Source of the DNA: Marsupella aquatica
Taxonomy: Eukaryota; Plantae; Marchantiophyta
Length of the DNA stretch: 64,000 nucleotides
Direction of reading: 5' to 3'
Assembly (NCBI GenBank): GCA_973895155.1
Contig: OZ316899.1
Span: 13,271,934 to 13,335,933 of the forward strand
Positions 2,150 through 34,779 of the stretch are shown here, piece after piece (positions within the stretch are counted from its first letter, which is position 1; each line of letters begins with the position of its first letter). The notes beneath the pieces were generated by a model, which worked only from the letters and a program-made list of their open reading frames with translations, was not told the origin of the DNA and made no database searches. Position numbers and translations under genes: made by a program.

Positions 2150-4291
2150 ATGTCTTTTGATGAGGAAGAGTCCGGTGAATCTGGACATCAATCCACTATT
2201 CCTAGGCATGGTCCAAACCAATCTCGGGAGCGGAATGCAAAATTTTCTGCAGTGTGGAAATACTTCGAGCAATGTGAAGCGCCGCCAAGATGTAATGATG
2301 TGAACCAAATGTATCGGAGATGCAAGTTTTGCAAAACATATAATACTTTTCATGCAACACGAGCAAAGGCACATTTGATGGGAAACAACGTGAAAGGGGA
2401 TGCGCCACCATGCCTAGGACTATATGGTCATGTCAACTTGGATGAAATCAACAGAATGTACAATGTCATCAAAGTTCCAACAGCTGTGAAATACAAACGA
2501 AGGGATGGAACCCACATTTTGCGGGATGCAAGAGGTCGCGGGCCAGATATTGGAACTTCAAATTCACAAGCATCCACATGAGTGTCTAACCATCTTCAAA
2601 CGGACGAGAAGTCAAATTTGACTGCTAGGGGTAGGGCAAGAAGTCTTTCCAACCCAATAATGGATGCTTTTCAAATTCCAAATAGAACATATTTGGACAA
2701 GCTTTGGGCAAAAGCGTTCTACACAAGTGGTATTGCGTTCAATGTTTCACAGAATCCTTATTTTTGAGAAGCGGTACATGAGACTTCAAAGGGAATTGTA
2801 AATGGGTATTCTCTTCCCATTATGACAAATTTGCGAATGAAGTTGTTGGAGGAGGCTAAGGAAGATCTCACAAAAGATATGACCAAAACAATGAAGCAAG
2901 CAAAACCTTTTGGATATTCTCTTTCATCCGATGGATGGAAAAACATCCGTAGGGAACCGTTGATGAACGTCATATTGTTGACTTCTAAAGGTGATTTTTT
3001 CTTGGATAGTTGGAATGCGGCACAAGCTGATAGGAAAGATGGAAAATATCTTGGAGAGATGTGGCTGAAATATATTGATGACATTGGTCCGGATCACATC
3101 GTTCAAATTGTAACCAATGGTGCGCCTGCAAATTGCGTAGCAGGTTGTGACATAGTTATGAAGAAATATCCACATGTCACATGGAGTTGGTGTGCTGCCC
3201 ATGTGTTTAACTTGTTGCTGGAAGATATGTGTGGTCACAAGAAAATTGTGGTGGATGAGAGTGGACGGAATCCATTCAAACTCATTTTTAAACGCTTGAG
3301 ATTGATAGTAAAAGCAGTTTCATCGTCACAAAAGCTTTCTGCAATATTTGTGAGGAAATTAGCTTACAAAAAACTATTGAATCCAAATGCAACAAGATTA
3401 GCGACCAATTTTTGGATGGCGCAAAGAGCTTTGGAGCTGAGAGGAGCTTTGCAACAAATGGTCATTGATGATAAATGGGAGTCTTACCGTGATAGACTTC
3501 CAATTCAACCAAAGTCAGCTGGGCATATGACTAGGGGAAAGGCAGATGAACTTAAAGCATGGATCCAACAAGATGCATTTTGGACTCAAGTGAAAGCCAC
3601 AGTGAACTTCTTTCTCCCGTTGGTGAAAATGCTACGCAAATTTGATGGTGATTCACCCCGGTCAGCATGGTTGTATTGGAGTCTGAAAAGGGGGATTATT
3701 GATCTCAAGGCAAGCATGGAGGAATGTTCATTGGTATCTGAGTACTTGAAGCCAAGGATACTAAAAGTTTACATGGATCAAAGAACATCTCTTACTACTG
3801 ATTTTATGCTAGCTGCGGCATATATAAATCCGAGGATATTTTTTGATGATGAACTAGATGTTGCAGGAGATGGAGAATTGTGTAGAGGGTTCAATCAATA
3901 CATTGCCAGATATGCTGAACACAATGTGAAGGAAGGGATCAACCATGATTGTGAGGTGAATGCACTCATTACTGCCATCCAAATGCAAGGAATTGAGGCG
4001 CAAAAGAAGTTGCCAAACACAACGGTAACCATGAGAGGAGCCCAATCAAGTATAGGTGATGTCAGCCTAGGAGAGTGGTGGCATTCATACGGTGCTGATT
4101 ATCCAGATCTAAGAATTATGGCTAGAAAAATCTGTCACCAAAAGATGCGTGCATCAGCGTGTGAACGAAATTGGAGTTCATATGGATTTATACATTCTGC
4201 AAGTCGCAATAGATTGACAAATGATTGAGCAAAGGTTTTGGTGTTTGTATTCACAAACATGAGAGTGGAAAAAGGGCTTACAAAAGTTTGA
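2150..4291 (+). pseudogene. hAT transposase (BED zinc finger, DUF659-type DDE core, C-terminal dimerisation domain) with in-frame stops
   Basis: WKYF...CKFC...RAKAHL BED finger; SDGW, IVTNGA (second catalytic D changed to N), WCAAH, WW..YG..YPDL..MA, SACERNWS. ORFs at 2150, 2582 and 2822 share one frame, separated by TGA stops. An acidic tail continues to ~5030. Confidence 0.92.
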
Positions 4292-6716: not shown

Positions 6717-7139
6717 CTATTCAATGGGAGTGAAATCTATTTGCGGCATTGCTAGACCCTCTTCTGTCATTTCCTCAATGGCTTGTTGACTCTCCATTGG
6801 TGGCATTTGGTTCAACAATCCTCGTTGCTCGTATTTGCGTTCATGAAATGGTGTGCGACACCAACATTTTTTGCTCTTCTTTAGCCATCTAAACAAGCAA
6901 GCATGATGCCATATATGACCACAAGTTCCAAACATGGAGACAGATTCAAGACCCCATGGATATAGGCACCAAGTACACTTGTCATCTTTTTCACGAACAA
7001 ATGCTGCCATATTATCATCATTTTTCCACTTATCAAAATATTTTTGAATGCCTTTAGCACTAGCCTCCACATCCGGAAAAAGGTTGTTGGATCCTGTAGG
7101 ATCAATGATCTGCATGTGAACAAAATCTTTTGACCCATC
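6717..7139 (-). pseudogene. 3' half of a coiled-coil/RING-H2 (E3 ligase-like) cargo gene, split by the retroelement
   Basis: CTWC...CGHIWHHAC...CWC RING-H2-like pattern. Removing 7140-16688 and one CATC copy joins it in frame to 16689+ (…ECESKK-DG-SKDFVH…). Confidence 0.8.
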
Positions 7140-7469
7140 TGTCACACCATTCTGAGTAGTATAGTAATATATCGTGCTATTAGAGTATGTACATTTGGTA
7201 TGAGTGCTATTGGAGCCGATAAGGTTCCGTTAGGTTTGTGTGAGAGGGTACTTCTCACTTGTGAGGCATTGAAAGGTCATCTTTCAATGTTGAGCCTTGG
7301 AGAGAGAGGAGCTTGAGTGTGGCTATGGTGGCTGTGAGCTCCGCTTGTGTAACGTGGATTCCTTGAGTAGTGCAAGGTGCGTTGGCTTGACATACGTGTG
7401 TGATCGGATCGGTGCGGGATCGATGGGGTATTGTTGACCGGGATCGTTGTGCCGATTGTATTGAGATTA
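7140..7469 (+). repeat. Split direct repeat A1 (330 bp)
   Basis: Near-identical to 16222-16551 (about 4 mismatches by eye). Confidence 0.95.
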
Positions 7470-7480
7470 CATTGAAAGAT
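7469..7480 (+). promoter_or_regulatory. Putative self-priming primer-binding site (Tf1-like)
   Basis: ACATTGAAAGAT directly after A1 is the exact reverse complement of ATCTTTCAATGT at 7279-7290 inside A1. No TGG-type tRNA PBS is present. Both 12-mers are conserved in the diverged copy (45096-45107 and 45281-45292). Confidence 0.65.
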
Positions 7481-7740
7481 CACATTCGAAATCTGTTGTA
7501 CGGACTGTGCGGACAGAAGTTCGATTGATTGAGTTGTCGACGGTTTGTGGTAGCTTGGATCGTGTGTTGTTATCGAACAGATCGTTGGTATCTTGACCTG
7601 TATCGTTGTTGTCCGATCGGTCTGCTTCCCGATCGATGTACAGATCTGTGATTGGTGACAGGTTTTGAGTTGGAGGTCGATTGATGATTCGTGGAGGAAA
7701 GCGAATGTTGAGTAGATGTTGGACAGTGGAAGTCGATCCG

Positions 7741-7830
7741 TGAGGCTTCAGATCCGATTGCCGGCTACTATGAGGCTTCAGATCTGATTGTCGGCTACTG
7801 TGGGGCTTCAGATCTGATTGTCGGCTATTG
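7741..7830 (+). repeat. 3 x 30-bp tandem repeat in the retroelement leader
   Basis: TG(A/G)GGCTTCAGATC(C/T)GATTG(C/T)CGGCTA(C/T)T(A/G) repeated three times. Further GGTCACCCATCCCGGGGCTATTCC duplications at ~8145-8235. Confidence 0.85.
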
Positions 7831-8794
7831 TTGGACGATGTTGGCAAGGTGCAGGTGAAGCGATGGCTCTTTTCCTGAAGGAACGGAGCTGCCAATGCCC
7901 CATGCGACGGTATCATCGTTTCAGTGAAAGAAACGAGGGTCAAAGGTGTTGAATCAAGCTGCTGCCAATTCTATGGAAGGGCTGCGTTTTTCATGAAGGA
8001 AATTGACAGTTTTGGGGAGCTTTTCGTGAAGGAAGTAGTCGTTTTGGGGGTCAGGTGTGAGGCGCATGAGGTCATCCATCCCAAAAGTGCTCCCAACCGC
8101 GAGCGCGAAGTCACCCATCGCGAGCGCAGGTAGGCGCGAGGTCGAGGTCACCCATCCCGGGGCTATTCCGGGCCGTGAGCGCGAGGGGAGGCACGAGGTC
8201 GAGCGCGAGGAGGTCACCCATCCCGGGGCTATTCCTAGCCGCGAGCGCTTAACTGACAAGTTCTCATCCCACCTTGTGTACACACAAGCTTTGACAACTT
8301 GTTGTTTAGATTCAAGCGCCAGGGGGCTTTATACACTTCCCGGTTTGTTTAGAGGCCTATTCTAGGCCAAATCAGAGGTTGTTTCAGGGTTTTTGATACT
8401 TCTGAGTCCATCTAGACTCACAGATTGAATCAATTTTGCCTTGGTTCTCATCTACAACATTGGAGTGCCATTGTGAAGCCTATTATGAAGGCTCTTCCTT
8501 GAACCTTATGCACATTGTCATATTGATTTGCATTTACTTTTGTGTGGAGAGTTGAATGGTATCCATTCTTGTTTCTGGATCCTCTTCACACATGTTTCCT
8601 GTTTATGTGCCATGTTAGTTTGGTGTGGGCGTTTGATTCCATAGGAGTGATCCGGGTTTGCAACCGAACATTCTAGTGTGCTGTGTATTTCTCTCCTGGT
8701 GATGTTGGAGTGATGTCCAACACACCATGGTGAGTGCTTGTGGTGCTGATAGGGACAGATTGCCCTTAGGGTTAGCACATAGATTAGGTTAGGG

Positions 8795-10156
8795 TTGATC
8801 ACCACGGATTCTTCTGGTGCTGTTGGGTTACCCGATGGACGACGGACCGGTTTCACTCGGAGTGGGGCGCAATTTTGGCCAGCGGCATTGGTAGCAGTCA
8901 GCAATGCAGCTTCAGACAGTGATTCTGATGAGGACTCAGTGACCAGTTCTCCTCATCATCAGGTGGTTGCACCTTTGTTGTGGGATATGGACGAGATGTA
9001 CGGGGCTACAAAGGGCCCACGACGATACTCTGGTGCAGTTGGCACGATTGATCTGGATGACTTCATCCAGGAGTTTGATACGTGGTGCGATATGCAGACA
9101 TTGCGTAACGCCACGTTGTTTACCCCTTTCATGGCATGGAAGGGATTATTTCAGCATTTGGAGGGGTCACCCATGGATGACTACCATGAGTTTTGGAAGG
9201 CTCATTTGGTTGAGATTGAGGCATGGAGGCAGCATTGGTCACCTAATTACGTGTCCATCACCTATGGCACTAGTGCGGCTACCCAACCCATTGCCACAGC
9301 TGTTGCCTCTTCTAGCAGCACTAGCCAGAGTGGCACACCATCCACCAGCAGCACTCCAGCAGCATCCACCGCTACTCCTGCCGGTGTGATTGTGACAGGA
9401 ACTGGAGTTGCGCCAGCATTTAATCCTGTGGTGGAATTCTTTGAGGTACTGAAGCAGAACTATCAGGGTGTAAGAACTGATAAGTTGAAGGGTCTTCAGG
9501 AGTTCCAGCACAAGACTGGAGAGAGTCTACGTGAGGCATACACTCGTATGCGCAGATTGATCACTGTCACCAAGGGAGTGACAGAGGCTCAAGCAGTCCA
9601 GTTTTGGTATGCAATTCTGGACAAAGAATTGCGACGCAGAGTGAGAGATGTCACTCTGCTTAGGGATGCAGATCCCACATTAGCAGTTGTTTTCACCCTT
9701 TCTGAGCGTATTGAGCTCAATATGGTGAATGAGAAGGTGGTGACTTCCGGATTTGCCAAGGAAGCACCAAAGGCTGCATCTACATCTACACCACAGCCTA
9801 CTACACGGAAGAGCCAGAGGGAGAAGCCTACTGCACGAGAGTCTACCAGCCAGAGACCTGTGCCCTCTTATGTTGGACAACAGTCAAGATGTTGGACCTG
9901 TGGTGGGGATCATGCACAAAGATATTGCCCAGATCATAGAGGATCAGGGGGAGCATCAGCACCTGATCAGCAACAGTGTGATCATTATGGAGCTCCTGGA
10001 CACACCAAGGATAGGTGTTTCTCACTCCACCCTGATTACGGAGGGGAGGATACCGTACACATGATCAGGGAAGAGGAGAAGGAGGTAGAGGTGGTGGACG
10101 TGGTCGTGGCATGCCACATGCAGGGAGACAGGGAGGTGACGCTGCCCCTGCTGTAA
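8795..10156 (+). pseudogene. Gag of the DNMT-retroelement (capsid-like region plus zinc knuckles); frameshift near 10035
   Basis: FQHKTGESLREAYTRMRRL retrotransposon-gag motif; CWTCGGDHAQRYC and degenerate CDHYGAPGHTKDRC knuckles; RGG-rich segment in the shifted frame. Confidence 0.85.
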
Positions 10157-10224
10157 CCATAGATCCTAAGGATGCTAAGATTGCTCAATTGGAGCAATAG
10201 CTAGCTGCCATGGCTAGTTCCTAG

Positions 10225-11358
10225 GTGAGACCTACTTCTGGTGATGGGGCATCTACATCCTATGGACCTTCCACATCCCATGGTCCTTCCACATCTTATG
10301 GAGCTGATGGAGATCTTGCCACCATGGGATTCATGTGTGGCACTGCACATATTGATGCATCAGCAGCTTTGACACATGGGGCAGCCAAAGCTCTTGAGCC
10401 CCGAGGAGCAGTAGTGGAGTTAGATCCACAGAGGGGGGATGCATGTCGGCAGACAAAGCTTCCTCAGTCTTTTATATTGTCAGAGACAGTTCAGACTGTC
10501 TCTATGAACCCGGTTCGGACAAACCCTGGCGTGGGTAAGTTGGCAAAATCCGGTAGTGATACAATAGGGATGACAGGTACCCTGCTGGGGGTGGCTACTG
10601 CCATAGTACGCACCCCATTATTTTCTGCGTCAGACATGCTGAACTTGGGAGTTGGTCCTACAGAAGTGTTCAGATTGGCAACTACACTCTGTGAGGACAC
10701 TCCAGTTGTTGCTTCCCATGCAGAAGCAGCTTGCAGTGTTGAAGCAGTGAAGACCATACCACCTACTGCTACTAGTGAGACATGGCATGCAACAGCAGCG
10801 AGGTTGGTGGATTTACCAGCATGCCCTGCATTTGAGAGGACTAGGTTTAAACCTAGTGTTGTGTCATTGGATAATCGGAGTGGTATCTTCCGATTAGTTG
10901 GGCCTTCTGGAGCAGTATACCAGCGAGAGAGAGTGTTACTGGATACTGGTGCTCAGCCCTTGATGTTGGGGAAGTCTGCCATACGTGGATTGGGATTGCG
11001 TCCAGAGGATTTGGAGGATTGGCCCTTTCCCATTCAGACTTCATTGGGGGGACTTACACCTACACAGCATATCATCAGGAGACCACTTGATTTGAGGATT
11101 CAGGAAGGTCATACCATAGATAGCTCACAGATACAGGCGCGAGATATTTTGACTAAGGCAGAGTCATATGATGTGTTGGTGGGATGTACAGTGCTCTACC
11201 CCATGGGATTTATTCTTGATTTTTGGGAGGAATCAGTATCATATAGACCTGATTGGCAGTCAAGAGATGCTCGATTGAGCAAATTGCCAGTGAGATTTAG
11301 TGGACCTGTGGAGGCCCTAAATCCACACCATTGTCTTTGGCAGCATTCAGTGGTGTAA
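10225..11358 (+). pseudogene. Aspartic protease region of the polyprotein
   Basis: VLLDTGAQ catalytic motif and downstream YDVLVG. Confidence 0.85.
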
Positions 11359-11645
11359 TTGCTGGACCTGATGATTTGATTGAGGGTAATGCGCATGCAA
11401 CCAGTGTTCCACCATTGGAGGAGTCTCATGAGGAGCACATCATGCGAGGATTACCTGTTGGCAGTGTTGTGCCACCAATGTGGGGCACTGCACAAGCCTT
11501 GCCACAGGCAGCAGCACGATTGGTACATGATGCATGGCGTCATGCTTTTACACCACAGTCAGGAGCAGAGCAGTCTCTTGCAGATGGACCTGTGACTCTT
11601 TCACCATTGGATACCACTCCTATTGCTTGGCAATATCCACCGGAG

Positions 11646-12615
11646 GGTATTTGTTTGTTGGATCTTTTTGGTGGGATTAGCACTGGATTGGCTGCTGTTC
11701 TTCAGGTAGGAATTCCTGTGCGTCGTTATTTGTATGTGGAGACAGATGAGACAACACGGAGGGTCTCATTGCGACATGTGGCTATGTTGGTGGATAGATA
11801 TCCACAGTTGCTGCCAGTGGATGCTGTTTGTGGTTATCAGCATGCACTACCTGCTGATATTTCATTGTTGGGGGCGGATCATCTACATCATGTTGGCCCC
11901 ATTGATTTGGTGATTGCTGGTTGGCCATGTTAGGGCCAATCTAGAGCTGGCATTGGGCATGGACTTCATGATCCACGCTCTGCATTGTTTTGGGAGATGT
12001 TACGGGTGCTGCGTCATCTCCAGCTACATCAGACAAAGTCTCCAGCATACATTTTAGAGAATGTGCCATTGTTAGGTGATGATCGTAGTCGGATTGTTGC
12101 CAGTGTTCACCAGGTGAGGTCTTGGATTGGACCTGCTGTGTTATTGGATGCTGCACGCGTGGGTTCTCGTGCACATCATCCACGCTTGTGGTGGACTAAT
12201 TTGATCCCATGTGAGGTGCTGAAGCGCACATTTGACAGCATTCCATGCTCACCAGCCTTAGTGGTGGATGATATTTTGGATCCAGGGCGTCGGGCACAGG
12301 GTGTGACCCAACCTGATAGACCTCCATTGGCAATGGTCAATGCAGTTGGGCGCCCACGTTGTGCATTACCCACTCTTGTAAGCCACTCTGCTTTATATGC
12401 ATTCAGAGCAGGTGGCCCTGGACTTGTGTGGGACACAGCTCTCCAGCAGTTAGTGGAGCCTACTGCTGATGAGAGAGAGCGTGCTATGGGATTTTTGATT
12501 GGCACCATTGCAGTTGCCTCTGTGTCAGAGGGTTTGCGGCGCCAGGTTCTTGGTCAAGCAATGGACCTGAATTGTTTGACTTGGATTATCAGCTTGGGAG
12601 TAGCTGAACAGTTGC
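11646..12615 (+). pseudogene. DNMT3-like C5-cytosine DNA methyltransferase domain inside pol (one in-frame TAG at 11931)
   Basis: Motif I LDLFGGISTG; II YLYVETD; IV DLVIAGWPC*G (TAG probably from CAG) followed by GLHDPRSALFWE; VI YILENV; VIII DAARVGSRAHHPRLWWTN; IX-X ERERAMGF...RRQVLGQAM. These match DNMT3 AHRARYFWGN and ERVFGF...RQRLLGRSW. Confidence 0.92.
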
Positions 12616-12899
12616 GGATGCGCTTTGCTGGAATTACTGATTGTCCCTTGGTGAGCTTGCGGTCCACTGAGACAGTATTGACCACAGTTGGGGGCGAGCA
12701 GAAAGTCCATGGACCTATGGCAGGATTGGCCAAGGCTGGACAGATTGTTGAGCAGGAAGGGACTGCTCAATTTACTGCTAAATAGCAATCATCGGCTATC
12801 TCTTCTACCCTACAAAGAGATATTAGGGATTTGGTGGAGAGTTGGGAACCACAGCTTGGCCCTAAGTTAACAGGGGAGGAGAGACGTCGCATGCATCGA

Positions 12900-14280
12900 T
12901 TCCTGAAGAGTTATTGGAATTGTTTTGCATTCAGCATGAAGGATTTGGGACACTGAAGGGCCCTGGTATTCAGATTGAATTGGCTAGTGATGCGCCAATC
13001 TTTCGTAGACCATACCATTATAGTGACATGGAGAGAGCTCTGATTCAAAGCAGAACTCAAGATTTGTTGGAGGCTGGATTGGTGGAGATTTCATATGGGG
13101 AGTATGCATCTGCCACAGTGATGCCAGCCAAGAAGGATGTGCATGGCAATTACACAGATAGGCGCATGTGTGGTGATTACAGACCTATTAATCACCAGAC
13201 AAAATCTGATCGATATGCCATGCCCACACCTGAGGAGATCTTTGATGCTGTGGGGCATGCAAAGGTTTTCAGTTCATTGGATCTGAGGGCAGGGTACCAT
13301 CAACTTCCAATTAGGCATGCTGACAGGTCCAAGACAACATTCTGGGGGATTGATTCTTATGGCAAAGATCATTTGTATCAGTGGTTATTCTTACCAAATG
13401 TTGAAGAATGCACCAGTTGAGTTCCAGAGAGTCATGGATCGAATCCTTGCAAGTTTGGATTTTGTCAAATGTTATATTGATGATATTTTGGTCTATTCTT
13501 CTACTGTGGAAGAACATCAGCAGCACTTGCAGATTGTGTTGGAGAGATTGAGAGCACATGGGTTGAAGCTCCATCCTGGCAAGTGTAAGTTCTTCCAAGA
13601 CCAGATTGAGTATTTGGACCACACTATATACCCAGGGGGATTGGGTGTACAGCAGACTAAAGTGGAGGCCATTACACAGATTCCTTGTCCTACTGATGTG
13701 AGTAGAGTTCGTGCATTCTTGGGATTGGCGAGCTACTACAGGAGGTATGTTAAAGGATTTAGCCAGCTTGCTAAACCTTTGACCATACTCACTAAGTTGG
13801 ATCAGGAATGGATTTGGGATGATGACCAGGAGCATGCCTTTCAGGAGTTGAAGCAAAGGTTGGCATCATCCCCTATTTTGAGAAGACCCATTTCAGGCAG
13901 ACCATTTCAGCTACACACTGATTGGAGTGGAGTAGGACTTGGAGCAGTGCTGACTCAGAAGGATGATGAGGGGAATGAGTTTGTTGTGGCTTATGCCAGT
14001 AGATCAAACAATTCAGCAGAGGCTAAGTATAGCTCTTATGAGGGAGAGTGTTTGGCAGCAGTGTGGACTGTTGCACACTTTTGTTGCTACTTGTTTGGTA
14101 ACCCCTTCACCTTGATGACTGATCATCAGCCTCTTAAGTGGTTAATGGAGTCTGACAAGCTTACAGGGAAGCTTGCACGATGGGCATTGTTGTTACAGGA
14201 GTATGATTTCTAGGTGGTGCATAGGCCTGGAAAAGTGAACTTGGATGCAGATGGATTAAGCCGCAATCCATGTACCAGTT
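12900..14280 (+). pseudogene. Reverse transcriptase and RNase H (gypsy type), frameshifted
   Basis: RMCGDYRPIN, FSSLDLRAGYHQ, KNAPVEFQRVMD, YIDDILVY, VRAFLGLASYYRRYV, LHTDWSGVGLGAVLTQ, TDHQPLKWL, LARWALLLQEYDF. Confidence 0.95.
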
Positions 14281-14654
14281 AGCAAGATGAGACTGGAGCC
14301 AGATGGCATGATGAGTCAGATAAGGAGATGGTGCCAGGATGGCATGCATCTGCCTTTCTTTGTTGGGTGCCAGCATACAGTGGATCTGTGAACTCTACCT
14401 CATTGGATGGAGTGGATGATGAGTCTTCAGATGTGGATGTTAGTGAGGTAACTACTGGACAGCAAGATATTCACAATGATGTGAGAGTGTTGGAATATCT
14501 GCGCAGTGGTTCTATTGTTGGCAGTGTTGATGCCAAGGAACGTGACAGGGTTCTACAGAGAGCCAAGAGGTTTCGATGGGAGGGAAACCATCTTTTGAGA
14601 GTACTGCATGATGGTAGAGTGTTGGTGGTCCCAAAACCATCATAGAGAGTACAT

Positions 14655-15740
14655 TTGGTGCGACATGCGCACGAGGAGTTGGGTCACTTTGGTGTAAAGC
14701 GCACTTACAGTTTGCTGCAGACACAGTATTGGTGGCGTGGTATGCACACTCATGTCCAGCAGTTGATAGCTAAGTGTGTGGTATGTGATAGAGTGAGAGC
14801 ATCATTTAATGCTCCCACTCCCCAGTTGCACCCGTTGCCGATCATGGGTTTGGGATATCGTTGGAGTTTGGATTTTGCTGGTCCATTACCTCTTACCCAA
14901 CGTCATAATCGGTATGTTTTGGTCATGGTGGAGCACTTCTCCAAGTGGATTGAGCTAGTGGCGTTGCCAGATAAAGCCAGTGGAGGAGTTGCTGCTACAT
15001 TTTTGGATCGTGTACTCAGTCATTTTGGAGCACCAGCTGAGGTGTTGACTGATCAGGGAACTGAGTTCCGTGGAGAGTTTGAGAGTTTGTGTGAACAAGC
15101 TCTGATTGATCATCGTACTACCTCTCGTGATCATCCTGAGGCAGATGGATTAGCTGAGAGAGTTGTGCAAACTGTGAAGAGAGGATTGCGTAAGTATGGC
15201 TTGCAGGTTGGTGATCTGGGAGATTGGGATCTCCAACTACCTTGGTTAGCTATGGGCTACCGTTTCAGTCGGCAAGCATCACTTGCATCCTTCTCACCTT
15301 ACTTTTTGCTCTATGGTAGAGAGCCAGATTTGCCAGCAGCTATTCGTCGTGATGCTGCATCAGTTGTGAACTTGGATGATCCTAATGTTTGGGTCAAGGT
15401 GTGTTCAGAGAGAGCACGGGTATTTCAGAGAGTGATGCCCATGGCTTTTGACAACCTTGTCATTGCCCAACATCGTGATACTTTGAGGTATGCCACTATT
15501 CGTGGAGGAGGTTACCGTGCAAGCATTCGGTGATTTCATCCTGGTGATTATATTTATTTGCAGCAGACAGCACCCACGACACTTGATGTGACCGCAGGCC
15601 GGACAATCTTACGTGTGCGTGAAGTGTTGCCTTCTGGTGTCCTGATGTTGGAGGGACGCGATGGTATGGTTTGGAAGGATCATGTGCGCAATTGTGCACC
15701 ATGTCACCTTCCCAACATTGATGGTACAGTAAATCCAAGC
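14655..15740 (+). pseudogene. DDE integrase (HHCC zinc finger, rve core, C-terminal region)
   Basis: HEELGHFG...CVVC; SLDFAGP, LTDQGTEF, DGLAERVV (D,D35E). No tyrosine-recombinase ORF anywhere in the element. Confidence 0.95.
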
Positions 15741-15767
15741 TTGGCACATGTTCGTGCTGGCTTGAAA

Positions 15768-15908
15768 TGTATGTTGTGTGGATTTGCTCAGGGAGCAGCT
15801 ACTATGTTGATTTGTGATAAGTGTTCTAGAGGATGGCACATGTCATGTCTGACACCACCATTGCAGGTGATTCCTAGTGGATCATGGTTGTGTCCTCAGT
15901 GTCGGTGA
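15768..15908 (+). CDS. C-terminal PHD finger of the polyprotein
   Basis: CMLC...MLICDKCSRGWHMSCLTPPLQVIPSGSWLCPQC, a canonical C4HC3 PHD, in frame with the integrase after a TGA at 15531. Confidence 0.92.
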   Translation, partial: CMLCGFAQGAATMLICDKCSRGWHMSCLTPPLQVIPSGSWLCPQCR

Positions 15909-16072
15909 AGCCGACTAGTTATCATTTGTGTTCTCTTGGCAGATATGGATTGCAGGTAAGTGATCGATGGGGCTCACTTGCACCCGGCCTCCTGATCTTC
16001 ACACCTAAAAAGGTGTATATCAACCTTGTAGAACTCATGGCTAGCTAGAGTTAGGGGACCTTACTTCCAGCT

Positions 16073-16082
16073 AGGGGGGCGA
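16073..16082 (+). promoter_or_regulatory. Polypurine tract
   Basis: AGGGGGGCGA immediately before repeat B1. Confidence 0.7.
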
Positions 16083-16219
16083 TTGTGGGTTTTGGACATG
16101 TGTGGACATGAGTTCCACTTGTATTCCATTCTCTTGTGTTTGTGATGTGGTAGTGTGACTATGTCTGGATGTATGTGACAAGCGATGTATGTTGTGTAGC
16201 GATATGTATGCGCACGACA
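16083..16219 (+). repeat. Split direct repeat B1 (137 bp)
   Basis: Near-identical to 16552-16688 (2 mismatches by eye). Ends GACA, followed by GC and then A2 starting TGTC. Confidence 0.95.
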
Positions 16220-16221
16220 GC

Positions 16222-16551
16222 TGTCACACCATTCTGAGTAGTGTAGTAGTATATCGTGCTATTAGAGTATGTACATTTGGTATGAGTGCTATTGGAGCCG
16301 ATAAGGTTCCGTTAGGTTTGTGTGAGAGGGTACTTCTCACTTGTGAGGCATTGAAAGGTCATCTTTCAATGTTGAGCCTTGGAGAGAGAGGAGCTTGAGT
16401 GTGGCTATGGTGGCTGTGAGCTCCGCTTGTGTAACGTGGATTCCTTGAGTAGTGCAAGGTGCGTTGGCTTGACATACGTGTGTGATCGGATCGGTGCGGG
16501 ATCGATGGGGTATTGTTGTCCGGGATCGTTGTGCCGATTGTATTAAGATTA
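16222..16551 (+). repeat. Split direct repeat A2
   Basis: Copy of 7140-7469. Confidence 0.95.
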
Positions 16552-16688
16552 TTGTGGGTTTTGGACATGTGTGGACATGAGTTCCACTTGTATTCCATTC
16601 TCTTGTGTTTGTGATGTGGCAGTGTGACTATGTCTGGATGTATGTGACAAGCGATGTATGTTGTGTAGCAATATGTATGCGCACGACA
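16552..16688 (+). repeat. Split direct repeat B2 (element 3' terminus)
   Basis: Copy of 16083-16219; ends GACA followed by TSD CATC. Confidence 0.95.
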
Positions 16689-18009
16689 CATCTTTCTTTG
16701 ACTCACATTCCAAATCACCATGGTTGAAATTATCTATCTCCTGCTGTAGATTTGTTATGATGAGCTGATGAGATGCAATGTCATTTCAAAGATCATTGAT
16801 GACTTTGTTCTTCTTCTGAAGTTCTGCCACTTCATTATGTTGAACTTCTCTTTGGGCAAGTTGTTGAGCCAGCTTCTCAATTTCTTCCATCTTGTCAAAC
16901 AATTGAACCTTGTACTCATTCATCTCAGAATTGCTTGTCGATTCCATGTGCCTCTTTTCTAGCAATTTTATCTTCAATTCAACCTCTTGTAGTTTTGCCT
17001 TGTACCTTTCAATGGTGCCAGATTCACAAAGCTCAACTGCAGATTTTGTGGAAAGATTCTTCTCAATGAGATTGCCAACCTCTACTCTCAAACTCTTGCA
17101 TACATGTTGCATGCTCATTCGCTCCTTGTTCGGGTTCAAAGTATCAATGTTGATTACATGTGGAGTTCTACTCCCAACGCCTGAAAGGTTTCATTGGTTT
17201 TCTTTTGTTGGTAGACTCCACACTGCTCGGTGTGGTTGATGCCTCAGGCTTCACAAAAAATTGTGAAATAGTAGTTGTTTTCTCCTTTTGTTGCATATTG
17301 CCCTGTTGCGCATCATCCATCTTTCTTTTGCACCCCTTGTTGGAAGTACCGATTGGAACATCTTTCTTTGCACTTTTGCCTCTATTTGTTGCAATAACAT
17401 GCACTGATTCATGCACCTGATGGGTCACCTTGCCATCATTATTTTCCCAACGGTAATCCACTTTCCAATTAAGAATGAACTCTGCAATCAAACATCAAAG
17501 AAATGGAGGACAAACAGGTCCAATTTTCCTATTTGCCTTGTTTGGAGCATATTCTCAAAATCTTTGTTGCCAATGCGTGGCAACCGCTCAATGTGTTACC
17601 TTTGAGATAGTAAATTTCTCCTTGACCAAGATCTTGTTTCCCACATTTCCGGATCATCAAAAAGCATTCGTGCAAATTTTTGGAACTCTGCTTTGGGCAT
17701 CAAAATCTCCAATTCTTTTGCATTGATGGGCCACTCATCATGAGGAGGTTTGACATTTTCTGCTACAATATTCCATTCCAAATCGATACTGCCATCCTCC
17801 AACTTTGTTGTGTTTTGCAAGGAGTTTTTGCTAGCCATAGCAGTATTACAAACATTGGGTTCCGACTCATCTTCCGGCCCAATTATTGGAGGTAGCAAGT
17901 TTCCATAAACATCATGATCAAAATCATTGTAGTAAGCATCTTGAGCGTCTTGCATGATTATAGGATCATATTTCACATTTGTATCTTTGTCATCATCATC
18001 AGATTCCAA
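16689..18009 (-). pseudogene. 5' part of the acidic/coiled-coil RING cargo gene
   Basis: Colinear minus-strand ORF pieces at 17596-18009, 17168-17491 and 16786-17139 (heptad-rich), continuing in frame across the retro insertion into the RING segment. Confidence 0.65.
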
Positions 18010-20405: not shown

Positions 20406-21128
20406 AAAGGAAACACAAGTGAACCAATACAATACAAAATACAAAACATAACCAAAAACAAAACCAAACATAAAACTAAAAACAAAACCTACCTTATCTC
20501 TTCCTCTCCTCCTCCTCCCCTCCTTCTCCTCCCCGACTCCTCCACTCTCCTTCCCTTCACTCCTCCTCTTGCAAAAGAAGACAATGAGGGAGGAGGTTGG
20601 GAGTCGCGGAACTCGACTACCTTAACATTTAGCTCCGGCGTCGCTGACTCCGACGCTGAGCTCCCTTATGGTCCAGGCCCGGATAGGCCATCCGGGGAGG
20701 ACTTAGCATCGGGAGACTTGTGGGCAATGAGACGTGGCATTGGCGAGGCAAGGGGCCAAGCTGGGGACACACACTAAGGACTTGGACTAGCCTATGGCTG
20801 GTCAGGTCAAGGGGAAATGGGTCGGGCTCAAGGATGGCCGTTCGGACCGTCGGATGGACTTTGAGTTCTGAGGGCTTGGGAGTGAGCTCCTCTTGGGCCC
20901 AAGGCCAATGGAGTTGACGCCATTGGCAACGGACGCTTGGGGCGCAAGTTGTGGCTCAATCCGGGTTGGGCCAGTTGAGGGCCCCGAGCGGCGATCAGAC
21001 CTGAGGGCCTAGGCATGAGCACTGGGTCGGCCCGGTCACAATGGGCTAAGGCACTCCGCTTGCGGATGCCTATCAAGAAAGTTATGGGCGTTGCCAGTTG
21101 GTGGCGCGCCCATTATGCGCGATGGGAT

Positions 21129-22864
21129 CTATGCGTTGAAGAAGTGGGAGATTTACCTTAAGAACGGTCCCAAAGTGGTCATCCACACAGATAGCTCGCC
21201 GGTCGGGTACTTCAGTTCTAAGCCAAGACTGAACCCCAAGAAAATGCGCTGGCAGATGTTCTTGGCGAATTTCAATTTCGAAGTCCGCCACGTTCTAGGG
21301 AAGACAAATACGGCAGCGGACGCGTTATCGCGTAAGGACCAACATCGTGTCAATGGGATCACGATGCTCGAATCCGAGTGGCCAAAGGTTCTGGCTGCGG
21401 CGTACGGGGATGACAGGTTAGCTAAGGAATGGCAAAGCAATGGGGGTAGCCAAGGCAAGGTAAGGCACGTATTGTTGGGTTGGATAAGACGCATAATGTC
21501 CAGTTATGGCGATACAAGCAGAGGCGTGTGTACATACCGGAGTCTCTAAGGTTAGAGGTTCTGCAAAAGTACCACGACTCGCCTTGGGGAGGGCATGGAG
21601 GACAAGCCGTTACGTATTGCATCATGTCGCAAGATGTGTATTGGCCGGACATGAAGCAATCGGTCCTTCAACACGTGCAAAGTTGTTACTTGTGCCAAAA
21701 GAATCAAACGGTCTATAGGGCAAAAGGAGGACTACTACAACCCTTACCAGTAGCTGCGGCTCCATGGGAGTCTATCTCCATGGACTTCATTGTTGGGTTA
21801 CCTGAGTACCACGGCAGTAACTCCATCTTAACAATTGTGGATTGTTTTTCCAAGTGGCATATTTCTTGCCTACTACGAAGATGGTTTTGGCCCGAGAGGT
21901 TGCCGGTCTAGTATTTGACAATGTCTTCCGACAGTGGGGATTGCCGTTGCATATCCTGTCAGATCGCGATACCAAGTGCACGGGCCATTCTGGAAGGCGT
22001 TGTTCCGGTTATCCGGAACGGACCTGACCAGGGGATCAGTGTATCATCATGAGACAGATGGCCAAACAGAACGGGTTAATGGTATCGTGGAGGACTACTT
22101 GCGTCACTTTGTGACGGCCAATCAAAAGGATTGGGCAAAGCACTTAACGATGGCCGAGTTTAGGTATAACTCGACCAAACATTCGGCGACGAGGTTTGCG
22201 CCGTTTGTGTTGGCCATAGGGAGGACACCAAGGGCGCCCTCCTGGTTTATAAATCCGGAAGCTTGGCGGACGAAAAGCAAGGTTCCTTCTGTGAACGAGT
22301 TTATTCGAGCGGTGCCTAGTTGTGGAAGCGGCTACCAAGTGTATGACCCTTGCCCTAAGTCGGTACAAGGAGCAAGGGGATAAACATCGACGCCAGGTAA
22401 GCTTTGAAATTGGGGAGAGCGTCTGGTTGCAGTTGAGACCTGAGCAATACCACGGGAACATAAGTAGGAAGCTAGCTCCTAGATATGCGGGGCCCTATCG
22501 CATCATACGATGGGCCCACAAGGATAATCCGGTTTTGGTGGTGTTGGAGACACCCAAGGAAATGGGCGTGGGCAAAAGCTACCATGTTAGCCAGCTCAAG
22601 AAGTTTGTCAAAGACGATGATCCCAACCGGGATCAGGCCTTGCGTCCGGACGCCATGCTGGTGGAGGACACGGAGGAGTTTGAGGTGGAGGAAATTCTGG
22701 ACCACCGTTACAAACGCAAGTTGGGAAGGCAAATCTTAGAGTATTTGGTGAAGTGGGCTGGCTACGACCAGGTCGAGAGTACTTGGGAACCGGAGGAAAA
22801 TTTGGGTAATGCCTCAGAGATCCTTGGAAGCTATCGTAAGCAAAGTGGCCTACCGCCGTTGTGA
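21129..22864 (+). pseudogene. pol remnant: RNase H end, integrase, chromodomain (frameshifted)
   Basis: NTAADALSR; HDSPWGGHGG..CYLCQ; WESISMDFIVGLP; TDGQTERVN; KLAPRYAGPY; FEVEEILDHR...EYLVKWAGYDQVESTWEPEENL. Confidence 0.93.
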
Positions 22865-23301
22865 ACGGGTACAGGCAACTGTAATTACCTTTGTGAGTTG
22901 TATCCTAGTTTCACTCCTCTCGGCCTCTTAAGGATAAAGTTGGATTGCGTTGGTGCTAGAGGTTGTTGGGCGGCCGATTTGCTTTTTGCGAGTGGAAGTT
23001 GATGGTGCCCGCCCTACATCTGTGGGCGGGCTAGTTTGAACCAAAGGGGAGCGCCCCAAGGGGAGGACAATGGGTTTGACGAGTTTGGAGTTAGCTTACC
23101 CGTTTGGATTGACATCCTACTTGGATGAGTGGGATAGGTTGGAATTTCCTAAGTTTGGAATGCGCATACCAACCTGGCTTGCATCAGCCTTATGGGCAAA
23201 CCATTTGTTACCTCATAAAAATTTGAAGACCCAAAGTGGTCTAGGCGTGTTGGAACATTTACTGAGGTCGCGCGGACGTGACCATTTTTAAGGGGGGGTG
23301 C

Positions 23302-24126
23302 AAGTCGCGGAACTCGACTACCTTAACACTTAGCTCCGGCGTCGCTGACTCCGACGCCAAGCTCCCTTATGGTCTAGGCCCGGATAGGCCATCCGGGGAG
23401 GACTTAGCATGGGGAGACTTGTGGGCAATGAGACGTGGCACTAGCAAGGCAAGGGGCCAAGCTGGGAACACACACTAAGGACTTGGACTAGCCTATGGCT
23501 GGTCGGGTCAAGGGGAAATGGGTCGGGCTCAAGGATGGCCGTCCGGACCATTGGATGGACTTTGAGTTCTAAGGGCTTGGGAGTGAGCTCCTCTTGGGCC
23601 CAAGGCCAATGGAGTTGACGCCATTGGTAACGGACGCTTGGGGCGCAAGTTGTGGCCCGATCTGGGTTGCGCCGGTTGGGGGCCCTGAGAGGCGATCAGA
23701 CCTGAGGGCCTAGGCATGAGCACTGGGTCGTCCCGGTCACAACGGGCTAAGGCACTCCGCTTGCGGATGCCTATCAAGAAAGTTATGGGCGTTGCCAGTT
23801 GGTGGCGCACCCATTATGCGCGATGGGATCCGGGTTGGGGGCCAAATGTTTAGGGACCAAAGCTGGTCCGGGGGTGGCAGGTCTCCAGAAGCATATATGA
23901 GGGGAGTGGTGTCTCCCTGGGGGCTAAGGCCGAGCCGAAGTCGTGAGACGCGGCGGTCGCGACACTAAGGGAAACCGCCAAACGGAAATGGCGATATCTC
24001 CCCAACGGGAAGTCCGTTGGAGGACTTCTTGGGTGCGTTGGAAAGCTCTTGAGGAGGGCTACGCCCTCCTGAGCTCAGATGGGTCTAGGGCTGCCATGAG
24101 TTCTCATGGTTTGCGGGTGTTAGCTC
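23302..24126 (+). repeat. Chromovirus LTR sequence (also at 20602-21128, 24487-25356 and 63107-64000)
   Basis: High-identity direct repeats starting AGTCGCGGAACTCGACTACC. Confidence 0.85.
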
Positions 24127-34453: not shown

Positions 34454-34779
34454 CACTATACACACGCACTCAGCACCCTGTCATTTTATTATGCAAGTGA
34501 AAAATACACTTCCTGTTAAGGATTTCACCCCCGACTGTACTTGCCAAAATACGTAACGTTCCAAAAAAACAAAAAAACAAAAAATATAGGTGCCTGAGTC
34601 ATGTACCTATTCTCAAGTGAATGAGACAAAATTCCTAAATGTTTGAGGGTGTCAACTCCTCCGCTGTCCTCACATGTACTGCCTCTGCACGTACATCCAT
34701 GACCATATCAGAGTCCAATCATGTATAGTCATAGACACAGGTGCCAGGTGCGAGACCGGTGTGAGATGTCCTCATCTTA

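What the first reader, a model, noticed from the sequence alone, without database searches (positions are those of the whole stretch)
7140..16688. Integrase-type gypsy retroelement with split direct repeats (A...B-A-B) and a palindromic circle-junction att site
Seen: A1 (7140-7469), internal region, PPT, B1 (16083-16219), GC, A2 (16222-16551), B2 (16552-16688). The ends are TGTC...GACA with TSD CATC, and the interrupted host ORF rejoins in frame. The internal B|A join is the perfect palindrome GACA-GC-TGTC, i.e. the two element ends head to head with 2 extra bases. The PPT and the priming site define the reverse-transcription 'LTR' as B+A, but the integrated ends fall in the middle of that unit. 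Known: A-B-A-B split repeats typify tyrosine-recombinase elements (PAT, TOC1, Ngaro), whereas DDE integrases process linear TG..CA ends by removing 2 nt. Inference: this family circularises its cDNA, and a DDE integrase cuts the internal palindrome after CA on both strands (2-nt GC overhang lost) and integrates a permuted circle. This would be a hybrid replication route that I do not know from LTR elements.
Basis: partly seen in the sequence, partly recalled or inferred. Interest (0 to 1): 0.93.

Follow-up and report, generated by a model that had tools for sequence, protein, structure and literature searches.

The report
Gypsy retrotransposon with permuted, split LTRs
A decayed plant (bryophyte) jumping gene of the gypsy type whose integrase cuts at a small palindrome inside the terminal repeat rather than at its tips, so every inserted copy has a rearranged A...B-A-B repeat layout; the layout is a family trait that had been noted once before, but its mechanism is unsolved.

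Summary
Window 7140-16688 is one insertion laid out A-internal-B-GC-A-B. It has TGTC...GACA ends and a 4-bp target duplication (CATC), and it sits in a RING-finger ORF that rejoins in frame.

It is not a one-off. The same layout, 2-nt spacer, palindrome and 4-bp duplications occur in copies from Calypogeia fissa, Marchantia polymorpha and Sphagnum fallax, and in about 24 distinct moss-metagenome copies. No copy has a conventional 5' LTR.

The element encodes gag, protease, a Dnmt3-like cytosine methyltransferase, RT, RNase H and a DDE integrase fused to a PHD finger. No tyrosine recombinase is present. The window copy is broken by stops and frameshifts.

Reverse transcription is self-primed as in Tf1: a 12-nt primer/PBS pair co-varies in six variants. 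This fixes the reverse-transcription LTR as B-GC-A. The A2|B2 join is an exact U5-tip|U3-tip junction.

An integrase acting on the internal palindrome of an LTR-LTR-junction intermediate is the best reading. However, the mirror-image permutation that a symmetric closed circle predicts is never seen.

De Mendoza et al. 2018 already noted DIRS-like repeats in a Gypsy-Dnmt3 element of Klebsormidium. This is therefore a new member of a known but mechanistically unexplained kind.

The parts
7136..7139 (.). Left copy of the 4-bp target-site duplication, CATC
   Evidence: The same tetranucleotide follows B2, and the empty site restores the host ORF frame.
7140..7468 (+). A1: 3' part of U3 (about 139 nt), R and U5. 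Starts TGTCACAC, the left integrated end.
   Evidence: 98.8% identical to A2. From position 126 on it is shared with a second, diverged copy in the window, which marks R-U5.
7267..7290 (+). Imperfect hairpin. PBS-like arm CATTGAAAG (7267-7275), loop, then the 12-nt self-primer ATCTTTCAATGT (7279-7290), followed by TGAGCC.
   Evidence: inverted repeat I1; same arrangement, co-varying, in all subfamilies; RNAalifold.
7469..7480 (+). Primer binding site ACATTGAAAGAT, the perfect complement of 7279-7290 (self-priming, Tf1-like)
   Evidence: 12/12 complementarity here and in five other sequence variants; 7 of 10 pairs carry compensatory changes and none is broken.
7481..8794 (+). Untranslated leader with short tandem repeats (30-nt units at 7741-7830; 39-nt units at 8068-8248)
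   Evidence: families D3, D4, D9, D12. No Pfam hit in its ORFs.
8795..10156 (+). Gag-like ORF with two CCHC knuckles
   Evidence: translation; 53-72% identical to proteins of Calypogeia, Marchantia and Sphagnum, some of them named gag/CCHC by their sources.
10225..11358 (+). ORF holding the aspartic protease motif (LLDTGA)
   Evidence: translation. No Pfam hit at E<=0.01, so the assignment rests on the motif and its position.
11331..12785 (+). Dnmt3-like cytosine-5 DNA methyltransferase region. It is broken here by a stop inside the PCQ motif.
   Evidence: motifs DLFGGISTG, GWPC*GQ and ENVPLL. The intact orthologous ORF of L001 hits PF00145, and DNMT3A/3B are its best solved relatives.
12914..14213 (+). 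Reverse transcriptase and RNase H, split over two frames (12914-13420 and 13317-14213)
   Evidence: RVT_1, RT_RNaseH and RT_RNaseH_2.
14655..15533 (+). Integrase: H2C2 zinc domain plus DDE (rve) core
   Evidence: The D, D and E residues are visible in the alignment.
15558..15908 (+). C-terminal part of the integrase ending in a PHD finger. A stop separates it from the core here.
   Evidence: PF00628, E 3.6e-11. It is one continuous rve+PHD ORF in L001.
16073..16081 (+). Polypurine tract AGGGGGGCG
   Evidence: Conserved immediately upstream of B1 in all copies.
16082..16219 (+). B1: 5' part of U3, ending GCGCACGACA
16216..16225 (.). Palindrome GACA-GC-TGTC: the two integrated ends head to head with a 2-nt spacer (16220-16221). 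Proposed integrase site.
   Evidence: The 2-nt spacer (mostly GC) and the flanking CGACA/TGTCA are conserved across copies and in a relative with 36% pol identity.
16222..16550 (+). A2, a complete second copy of A
16551..16688 (+). B2, joined exactly to the U5 tip of A2 (a U5|U3 'circle-type' junction at 16550|16551). It ends in GACA, the right integrated end.
   Evidence: The first base of B co-varies between B1 and B2 in L088, which places the junction exactly.
16689..16692 (.). Right copy of the target-site duplication, CATC
6717..7139 (-). C-terminal part of the interrupted host ORF (RING-H2 finger). Its upstream part continues from 16693 on the minus strand.
   Evidence: in-frame rejoining; zf-RING_2, zf-rbx1.

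Best explanation
What it is: a decayed member of a bryophyte lineage of self-priming Ty3/gypsy retrotransposons. Its gene order is gag, PR, Dnmt3, RT, RH, IN-PHD. The two integrase recognition ends are not at the LTR tips. They lie head to head inside U3 as ...CGACA-GC-TGTCA....

Proposed cycle:
1. Transcription starts at the 12-nt primer arm in A1 and ends in R of A2.
2. The RNA 5' end folds back on the PBS and primes minus-strand synthesis, as in Tf1. The PPT primes the plus strand. The cDNA therefore carries LTRs of the form B-GC-A, whose tips (ATTG... and ...GATT) are not integrase substrates.
3. The U5 tip becomes joined exactly to a U3 tip, giving an LTR-LTR junction. This could arise by ligation into a 2-LTR circle, by plus-strand end-to-end template switching, or by host end joining.
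4. The DDE integrase cuts 3' of CA on both strands of the palindrome in the PBS-proximal LTR. This leaves 5'-GC overhangs, like ordinary 3'-processed ends.
5. The two ends are inserted across a 4-bp stagger.

The product is A-internal-B-GC-A-B. It still carries one complete U3-R-U5 plus a 5' R-U5, so it is replication-competent.

Shown here: the layout, its conservation, the target duplications, the exact tip-to-tip junction, the self-primer, the DDE integrase and the absence of a recombinase.

Inferred: the junction intermediate, cleavage by the integrase, and the order of events.
For: Layout and insertion
- The layout, the TGTC...GACA ends and the CATC duplication are in the window.
- The same layout with 4-bp duplications occurs in long-read genomes: Calypogeia L001 (AGGC), Sphagnum L003 (AAGT), Marchantia L086 (GGTT) and L087 (CCCT).
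- Metagenome copies L012, L019 and L047 also have matching duplications.
- Thirty-three A copies sit in a B-A-B context. Twenty-one 5' ends (about 20 distinct) are flank|TGTC-A-PBS with no B upstream.

Conserved ends
- The spacer is always 2 nt, mostly GC. Most variants are transitions.
- The integrated ends are conserved (TGTCA[C/T]......CGACA). The U3 and U5 tips vary and are not TG...CA.

Junction
- The A2|B2 junction equals U5 tip|U3 tip with no PBS or PPT bases.
- One copy (L019=L028) has a 17-nt partly templated insertion plus 3 PPT bases. This shows the junction is made afresh from cDNA ends.

Self-priming
- The primer/PBS pair is 12/12 complementary in six co-varying variants.
- RNAalifold pairs the RNA 5' end with the PBS. 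Seven of 10 pairs are compensatory and none is broken.
- A TATA-like box lies about 30 nt upstream of the primer arm in most subfamilies, though not recognisably in the window copy.

Enzymes
- An rve DDE core is present and no Phage_integrase domain is found in any ORF.

Independent sign of internal cleavage after GACA
- Two loci end in an inverted copy of the left end of A (...GGTCATGACA|flank), placed beyond U5-PBS.

Precedent
- Tetrameric HIV-1 integrase and foamy-virus integrase cleave palindromic LTR-LTR junctions (PMC1905944; PMC1180852).
Against: - No extrachromosomal intermediate and no enzyme activity has been observed. The mechanism is inferred from end products only.
- A symmetric closed 2-LTR circle has two identical palindromes. 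It should yield A-B-GC-A-internal-B as often as the observed form, yet 0 of about 20 5' ends show it. Some asymmetry is therefore needed that I cannot explain.
- About 15 distinct metagenome loci are A-internal-B with correct 4-bp duplications. They could be direct products of cutting both LTRs of a plain linear cDNA. If so, a junction intermediate is not always needed.
- The window copy and every copy examined have broken pol frames. No demonstrably active copy is in hand.
- The transcription start and poly(A) sites are not mapped.
Confidence: 0.6

Rival explanations
1. Closed, symmetric 2-LTR circle, exactly. The full-length blunt cDNA is ligated into a covalently closed circle in the nucleus, and the integrase linearises it at one internal palindrome chosen without bias.
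For: The exact U5|U3 junction. An occasional junction with inserted or retained bases, typical of end joining. Known integrase cleavage of circle junctions (PMC1905944, PMC1180852).
Against: It predicts about 50% A-B-GC-A-internal-B insertions, and none is seen among about 20 distinct 5' ends. All six copies from long-read genomes carry the duplication on the 3' side. The inverted-A right ends cannot come from a circle.
Confidence: 0.2
2. No junction intermediate before integration. The integrase tetramer cleaves the palindrome of one LTR on the linear cDNA and inserts both halves. Host double-strand-break repair then joins the two free cDNA tips (U5 and U3) inside the chromosome. Alternatively, the plus strand switches from the U5 tip to a U3 tip and only a tailed linear molecule is used.
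For: The L019 junction, with a templated 17-nt insertion and PPT remnant, looks like repair or template switching. Right-end extensions beyond U5 do occur: PBS plus inverted A. The missing mirror form suggests an asymmetric, not fully closed substrate.
Against: The first version again predicts the mirror form unless one LTR is preferred. There is no direct evidence for either version. Most junctions are exact, which is unusual for error-prone repair.
Confidence: 0.15
3. Conventional LTR element rearranged after insertion, or a one-off aberrant insertion or assembly artefact. The family normally has paired B-GC-A LTRs and this copy is exceptional.
For: Short-read assemblies can mis-thread repeats. 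Unequal exchange does occur: L088 has B-A-B-A-B.
Against: The same layout with matching 4-bp duplications occurs in five independent assemblies, several of them chromosome-scale, and in about 24 distinct elements. No copy has a conventional 5' LTR.
Confidence: 0.02
4. DIRS/PAT-like mobilisation by a tyrosine recombinase supplied in trans, with the palindrome as a recombinase core site.
For: The A-internal-B-A-B layout is the hallmark of PAT/Ngaro-type elements. The palindrome resembles a recombinase core.
Against: Every testable copy has a 4-bp target duplication of variable sequence. That is the signature of a staggered DDE strand transfer, not of conservative site-specific recombination. The elements encode a conserved DDE integrase and no recombinase. 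The spacer is only 2 bp.
Confidence: 0.03

Closest known systems
KnitGypsy-Dnmt3 of Klebsormidium nitens (de Mendoza et al. 2018, PMC5890265)
   Same: An LTR-Gypsy domain set with a Dnmt3-type methyltransferase inside Pol. The Fig. [quoted passage not shown]
   Different: The host here is a bryophyte rather than a charophyte. That paper treated the acquisition as specific to the K. nitens lineage and gave no mechanism, target duplication, palindrome or priming analysis. Direct sequence homology to the K. nitens element could not be tested, because no K. nitens sequence was retrievable.
Tf1/sushi/Tcn1 group of self-priming Ty3/gypsy elements
   Same: [quoted passage not shown] Here the pair is 12 nt and co-varies. 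From memory, unverified here: the Tf1 self-primer is not removed, and its integrase must cut off the PBS-derived extra bases. That would be a smaller-scale case of internal end processing.
   Different: Those elements have ordinary paired LTRs with TG...CA tips and a chromodomain. This family has permuted repeats, internal integrase sites and a PHD finger. Its phylogenetic position was not tested.
DIRS-order elements with split direct repeats (PAT, Ngaro; TOC1 of Chlamydomonas, the last from memory)
   Same: The A1-internal-B1-A2-B2 layout.
   Different: They use a tyrosine recombinase and make no target duplication. Here a DDE integrase, 4-bp duplications, a PPT and a PBS are all present.
Integrase cleavage of the retroviral 2-LTR circle junction (foamy virus, HIV-1; PMC1180852, PMC1905944)
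   Same: A retroviral-type integrase cuts both strands of a palindrome made of the two viral ends head to head, 'restriction-like', and the reaction requires a tetramer.
   Different: In retroviruses the palindrome is created by joining the LTR tips and is a side pathway. Here the palindrome is encoded inside U3 and inherited through the RNA. The tip-to-tip junction is not palindromic and is kept intact in the inserted copy.
Circle junctions of IS3/IS30-family insertion sequences such as IS911 (established knowledge, not tested here)
   Same: A DDE enzyme acts on two abutted ends separated by a 2-3 bp spacer.
   Different: Those are bacterial DNA transposons whose junction is formed by circularisation. 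No reverse transcription is involved.

Membership tests
Ty3/gypsy (Metaviridae) LTR retrotransposon | Pol order PR-RT-RNase H-IN with a DDE (rve) integrase | tested here: met
   Pfam: RVT_1, RT_RNaseH, Integrase_H2C2 and rve, in that order.
Ty3/gypsy (Metaviridae) LTR retrotransposon | Two identical terminal direct repeats (U3-R-U5) with TG...CA tips flanking the internal region | tested here: not met
   The 5' end carries only the 3' two-thirds of the LTR (A). The 3' end carries LTR plus an extra B. TG...CA lies at the permuted ends, not at the U3/U5 tips.
Ty3/gypsy (Metaviridae) LTR retrotransposon | Short target-site duplication, a PBS next to U5 and a PPT next to U3 | tested here: met
   4-bp duplications in all 12 copies with both ends readable. 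PPT AGGGGGGCG is present, and the PBS is a self-primer type.
Gypsy-Dnmt3 elements with DIRS-like repeats (KnitGypsy-Dnmt3 kind) | Dnmt3-type C5 methyltransferase domain inside the polyprotein | tested here: met
   Motifs I, IV and VI in window 11331-12785. PF00145 in intact orthologues. Best solved relatives are DNMT3A/3B.
Gypsy-Dnmt3 elements with DIRS-like repeats (KnitGypsy-Dnmt3 kind) | A-coding-B-A-B repeat arrangement combined with Gypsy domains | tested here: met
.
Gypsy-Dnmt3 elements with DIRS-like repeats (KnitGypsy-Dnmt3 kind) | Sequence homology or shared ancestry with the K. nitens element | not tested
   No K. nitens protein appeared in the length-limited searches, and no plant or algal genome collection can be scanned with these tools.
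DIRS order (tyrosine-recombinase retrotransposons) | Encodes a tyrosine recombinase | tested here: not met
   No Phage_integrase hit in any ORF of at least 80 aa on either strand, nor in L001 or L003.
DIRS order (tyrosine-recombinase retrotransposons) | Insertion without target-site duplication | tested here: not met
   4-bp duplications of variable sequence in every testable copy.
Tf1/sushi-type self-priming elements | The 5' end of the RNA (start of R) is complementary to the PBS immediately after U5 | tested here: met
   12/12 complementarity in six co-varying variants and compensatory pairs in RNAalifold. The transcription start itself is not mapped.
Tf1/sushi-type self-priming elements | Phylogenetic placement of RT/IN within the Tf1/sushi/Tcn1 clade | not tested
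   No reference set (GyDB or REXdb) is available here. The more distant hits carry chromodomains and the SH3_Tf2-1 domain, which is only suggestive.

The most novel reading that the evidence does not exclude
A whole lineage of Ty3/gypsy elements has moved its integrase att sites from the LTR tips to an inherited palindrome inside U3. The lineage spans liverworts, mosses, the charophyte Klebsormidium and probably more distant algae, since L090 keeps ACGACAGCTGTCACAC at 36% pol identity. It would replicate obligatorily through an LTR-LTR-junction intermediate that a retroviral-type DDE integrase cuts in a restriction-like way, with a built-in asymmetry that always places the duplicated LTR on the 3' side. 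That would be a third, so far uncharacterised integration route for LTR retroelements. It would sit between classical integrase elements and DIRS elements, and it would be a natural realisation of the old 'circle junction as att site' idea.
Probability: 0.5. Interest if true: 0.85.

Novelty: new member of a known kind. Interest (0 to 1): 0.72.

Why it matters
LTR retrotransposons and retroviruses are taught to integrate from linear cDNA whose LTR tips are processed by the integrase. Split A...B-A-B repeats are treated as diagnostic of tyrosine-recombinase elements.

This family breaks both rules with an ordinary DDE integrase, and it does so consistently across bryophytes.

Three consequences follow:
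- It shows that integrase end recognition can be uncoupled from the ends made by reverse transcription.
- It offers a natural system for testing internal, palindrome-directed cleavage by a retroviral-type integrase. So far that activity is known only as a side reaction of HIV-1 and foamy-virus enzymes.
- It occurs in Marchantia polymorpha, a tractable model plant.

There is also a practical point. LTR-finding pipelines that require paired LTRs will miss or mis-annotate these elements, so their Dnmt3 genes may be counted as host genes. The plant survey read here does not mention PHD, methyltransferase or Marchantia.

Tried and rejected
Searches that gave nothing useful
Repeated with a single protein.
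- Look-ups of distant PHD-clade relatives. P0082 and P0087 returned no DNA. L089 and L090 showed no terminal repeats within the contig, so they say nothing about layout. L090 does keep the palindrome.
- Scan of viral contigs: one irrelevant hit.
- Marchantia loci L002 and L004 and ENA locus L005 were too degraded or truncated for the 3' structure. L005 still gave a primer/PBS pair.
- The second, older copy in the window (minus strand, about 45306 downwards) has no recognisable 5' terminus or B.
- Literature searches for a bryophyte description or for the Tf1 primer-removal paper found nothing in the searchable library.

Ideas considered and rejected
- Nested insertion of a solo A-B unit next to an A-internal-B element. 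No duplication flanks A2-B2, and the spacer is a constant 2 bp.
- Plus-strand priming just upstream of A2. There is no purine tract there.
- A tRNA primer. The PBS does not start TGG, and it co-varies with R.
- Hairpin priming from the PBS-like arm as the source of the permutation. It does not reproduce the exact U5|U3 junction.

Step left out
- The joined host ORF was examined only inside a script. It was not sent as a joined sequence to any search tool. Its downstream piece was searched by reference.

Full report
1. THE OBSERVATION

Repeat finding and blastn confirm two direct-repeat families. They are A (7140-7469 and 16222-16551, 98.8% identical) and B (16082-16219 and 16551-16688, 98.6% identical), arranged A-internal-B-GC-A-B.

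Read directly, the left end is ...CATC|TGTCACACC. The internal join is ...GCGCACGACA-GC-TGTCACACC.... The right end is ...GCGCACGACA|CATC....

GACAGCTGTC occurs once in the window, against 0.08 expected by chance.

Deleting the element and one CATC restores an uninterrupted minus-strand reading frame. The C-terminal part of that ORF is a RING-H2 finger. The joined ORF was inspected only in a script.

The element is therefore a single genuine insertion with a 4-bp target-site duplication.

2. CODING CONTENT

The plus strand encodes the following:
- a gag-like ORF with CCHC knuckles;
- a protease motif;
- a region with cytosine-5 methyltransferase motifs I, IV and VI;
- RT and RNase H;
- an H2C2 plus DDE (rve) integrase;
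- a C-terminal PHD finger.

The intact orthologous ORF in Calypogeia hits PF00145, and DNMT3A/3B are its best solved relatives.

No tyrosine recombinase domain is found in any ORF on either strand.

The pol frame of the window copy is interrupted by several stops and by frameshifts, so this copy is dead. The A and B pairs differ by about 1.3%.

3. NOT A ONE-OFF

The gag ORF finds relatives only in bryophytes: Calypogeia fissa, Marchantia polymorpha and Sphagnum species. The surrounding DNA shows the same layout each time.

| Locus | Species | Target duplication | Internal join |
|---|---|---|---|
| L001 | Calypogeia fissa | AGGC | GCACGACA-GC-TGTCACAC |
| L003 | Sphagnum fallax | AAGT | as above, with point changes |
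| L086 | Marchantia polymorpha | GGTT | GC spacer |
| L087 | Marchantia polymorpha | CCCT | GC spacer |
| L088 | Calypogeia fissa | not determined | B-A-B-A-B (one extra A-B unit) |

A metagenome scan with the IN-PHD protein returned 80 moss-associated loci. Mapping A and B on all loci gave these counts:
- 33 A copies in a B-A-B context, about 24 distinct elements after removing the same locus assembled in different samples;
- 21 5' ends (about 20 distinct) that are flank|TGTC-A-PBS;
- no 5' end preceded by B or by A-B.

The spacer is always 2 nt. It is usually GC, and the variants AC, GT and AT are explicable as transitions.

Target duplications are 4 bp and variable in all 12 copies whose two ends could be read.

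That test is answered: none do.

4. WHAT DEFINES THE REVERSE-TRANSCRIPTION LTR

Directly after A1 lies ACATTGAAAGAT (7469-7480). It is the perfect complement of ATCTTTCAATGT (7279-7290) inside A.

The same 12/12 complementarity is found with different sequences in other subfamilies:

| Source | Primer arm | PBS |
|---|---|---|
| Window | ATCTTTCAATGT | ACATTGAAAGAT |
| Calypogeia | AGTTCTCTAAGT | ACTTAGAGAACT |
| Sphagnum | AGTTCTTTGAGT | ACTCAAAGAACT |
| Marchantia | AGTTCTTCGAGT | ACTCGAAGAACT |
| L005 | AGTTCTTCGTGT | ACACGAAGAACT |
| L061 | TTCTTGTCAAGT | ACTTGACAAGAA |

RNAalifold pairs the first 10 nt with the PBS. Seven pairs are compensatory and none is broken. A conserved adjoining stem follows, GTTGAGCC pairing with GGCT(T/C)GA(C/T).

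A TATA-like box sits about 30 nt upstream of the primer arm in most subfamilies, though not recognisably in the window copy.

This is the Tf1-type self-priming arrangement (PMC7175516; plant Tcn1 clade, PMC6317226).

The conserved PPT (AGGGGGGCG) lies directly before B1. Together these fix the LTR made by reverse transcription as B-GC-A, with U3 = B + GC + about 139 nt of A. Its tips vary between subfamilies and are not TG...CA.

The integrated ends, TGTCA(C/T)... and ...CGACA, are conserved even in a relative with 36% pol identity. L090 carries ACGACAGCTGTCACAC about 900 nt after its pol stop.

5. THE A2|B2 JOIN

In L088 the first base of B is G in B1, B2 and B3, where L001 has A. That base therefore belongs to U3. 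The A after U5 in A1 belongs to the 12-nt PBS.

The A2|B2 join is thus exactly U5 tip|U3 tip, with no PBS or PPT bases. This is the sequence expected from joining the two tips of a complete cDNA.

B2 and this join lie downstream of R in A2, so they are not expected to be copied in the next cycle. Each copy would then record a fresh joining event.

One copy (L019=L028) has a 17-nt partly templated insertion and three retained PPT bases at this join.

6. OTHER END PRODUCTS

- A-internal-B. About 15 distinct metagenome loci have this form, with correct 4-bp duplications in the four that can be tested. They may be direct products of cutting both LTR palindromes of a linear cDNA or of a 1-LTR circle. 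They may instead be B1/B2 recombinants, or loops collapsed by short-read assembly. None of the six long-read copies has this form.
- Inverted-A right end. Two different loci (L021=L025, and L064) end in PPT-B-GC-A-PBS, followed by the reverse complement of the hairpin and of the first about 165 nt of A. They terminate ...GGTCATGACA|flank. This is what would result if the plus strand copied a long, unremoved self-primer and the integrase then cut after the first available GACA. It is independent support both for self-priming and for internal cleavage at the end motif.
- Tandem type. L061 shows IN-PPT-B-GT-A-PBS-leader.

7. MECHANISM

The simplest account consistent with all this has four parts:
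- The integrase sites are the two halves of the palindrome.
- Cutting 3' of CA on both strands yields two recessed CA-3'OH ends with 5'-GC overhangs, equivalent to ordinary processed ends.
- Strand transfer is across 4 bp.
- The standard product requires that a B segment be joined to the U5 tip, that is, an LTR-LTR junction.

Precedent exists. HIV-1 integrase tetramers and foamy-virus integrase cleave palindromic LTR-LTR junctions (PMC1905944; PMC1180852).

A 2-LTR circle holds two identical palindromes. Cutting the other one would give A-B-GC-A-internal-B, which is never seen (0 of about 20 5' ends). All six long-read copies have the duplication on the 3' side.

Three possibilities remain that I cannot separate:
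- The intermediate is not a symmetric closed circle. Examples are a plus-strand switch from the U5 tip to a U3 tip, or a tailed or branched molecule.
- One LTR is preferred for an unknown reason.
- Mirror copies collapse quickly through their closely spaced 329-bp A repeats.

These need experiments.

8. COMPARISON WITH WHAT IS KNOWN

De Mendoza et al. 2018 described KnitGypsy-Dnmt3 in Klebsormidium nitens. It is a Gypsy element with Dnmt3 in Pol. The legend of their Fig. 4c says its repeats have the structure of a DIRS element while its domains are those of Gypsy.

The combination found here therefore belongs to a kind already recorded. That record has no mechanism, and the acquisition was presented as specific to the K. 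nitens lineage. Only that paper contains the element's name in the searchable library.

The plant LTR survey of Neumann et al. does not mention PHD, methyltransferase or Marchantia.

I could not fetch K. nitens sequence, so homology is inferred from shared architecture and was not tested.

New here:
- the bryophyte distribution, with many annotated 'hypothetical proteins' of Marchantia;
- the 4-bp duplications;
- the conserved palindrome with its 2-nt spacer;
- the exact tip-to-tip junction;
- the self-priming;
- the PHD-fused integrase;
- the missing mirror permutation;
- the minor end products.

9. VERDICT

The finding is a new member of a known but unexplained kind.

Interest is high but not extreme. 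The phenomenon has been glimpsed before. However, the evidence now makes a long-dormant question directly testable in a model plant: can a retroviral-type integrase use an internal, junction-like palindrome as its natural substrate?

No repaired or consensus sequence was built.

Noticed in passing
window 11331-12785 (+): A Dnmt3-like cytosine-5 methyltransferase domain lies between protease and RT. In this copy a stop codon sits inside the catalytic PCQ motif. Intact versions are annotated as hypothetical proteins or as 'DNA (cytosine-5)-methyltransferase' in Marchantia and Sphagnum, so they may be counted as host genes.
   Followed up: partly
window 15558-15908 (+); L001 16245-17330: The integrase ends in a PHD finger instead of the chromodomain of chromoviruses. 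Many unnamed relatives at 35-55% identity share RT-RH-IN-PHD, some with and some without DNMT. In P0082 the precomputed Pfam order puts DNMT between RNase H and integrase, not before RT as here. This hints at more than one acquisition or at a rearrangement.
   Followed up: partly
window 7267-7290; same position in L001, L003, L005, L086: A conserved but imperfect hairpin: a PBS-like arm sits immediately upstream of the self-primer arm, between a TATA-like box and the presumed transcription start. It co-varies with the primer. Its role is unknown.
   Followed up: partly
window about 45306-43743 and 26487-25369 (minus strand): A second, older and diverged copy of the same family. It shares R-U5, the PBS and parts of the leader and gag (79-89% identity), but not the first 125 nt of A nor B. 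About 17 kb of other sequence separates its two parts, including a CACTA-type transposase (31623-34465) and a BRCT-domain ORF. Its ends could not be found.
   Followed up: partly
L021 3361-3890 (= L025) and L064 1282-1800: An alternative 3' end: B-GC-A-PBS followed by an inverted copy of the first about 165 nt of A, ending ...GGTCATGACA at the host junction. It is found at two different loci.
   Followed up: partly
L088 15454-16429: A Calypogeia copy with B-GC-A-B-GC-A-B, that is, one extra A-B unit. It could come from unequal exchange or from a multi-LTR intermediate.
   Followed up: no
L019 10840-10860 (= L028): The U5|U3 junction carries a 17-nt insertion partly copied from nearby A sequence, plus three retained PPT bases. 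It is an error record of the joining step.
   Followed up: no
alignment A2: The IN-PHD protein is 74-84% identical between liverwort (window, Calypogeia) and moss (Sphagnum) copies. That is high for lineages separated for hundreds of millions of years. It points to strong constraint or to horizontal transfer.
   Followed up: no
L090 11590-11610: A relative with only about 36% pol identity, from an unidentified organism in a JGI metagenome, keeps the motif ACGACAGCTGTCACAC downstream of pol and after a purine-rich tract. The contig is too short to show the repeats.
   Followed up: partly
window 2822-4228, 20592-24784 with 63097-63955, 60329-61810: The window is rich in transposable elements. 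It holds a hAT transposase ORF, a Ty1/copia RT ORF, and a further set of long direct repeats (three copies, 84-98% identical) belonging to other elements.
   Followed up: no
window 7741-7830 and 8068-8248: Short tandem repeats (30-nt and about 39-nt units) lie in the 1.3-kb untranslated leader between the PBS and gag.
   Followed up: no
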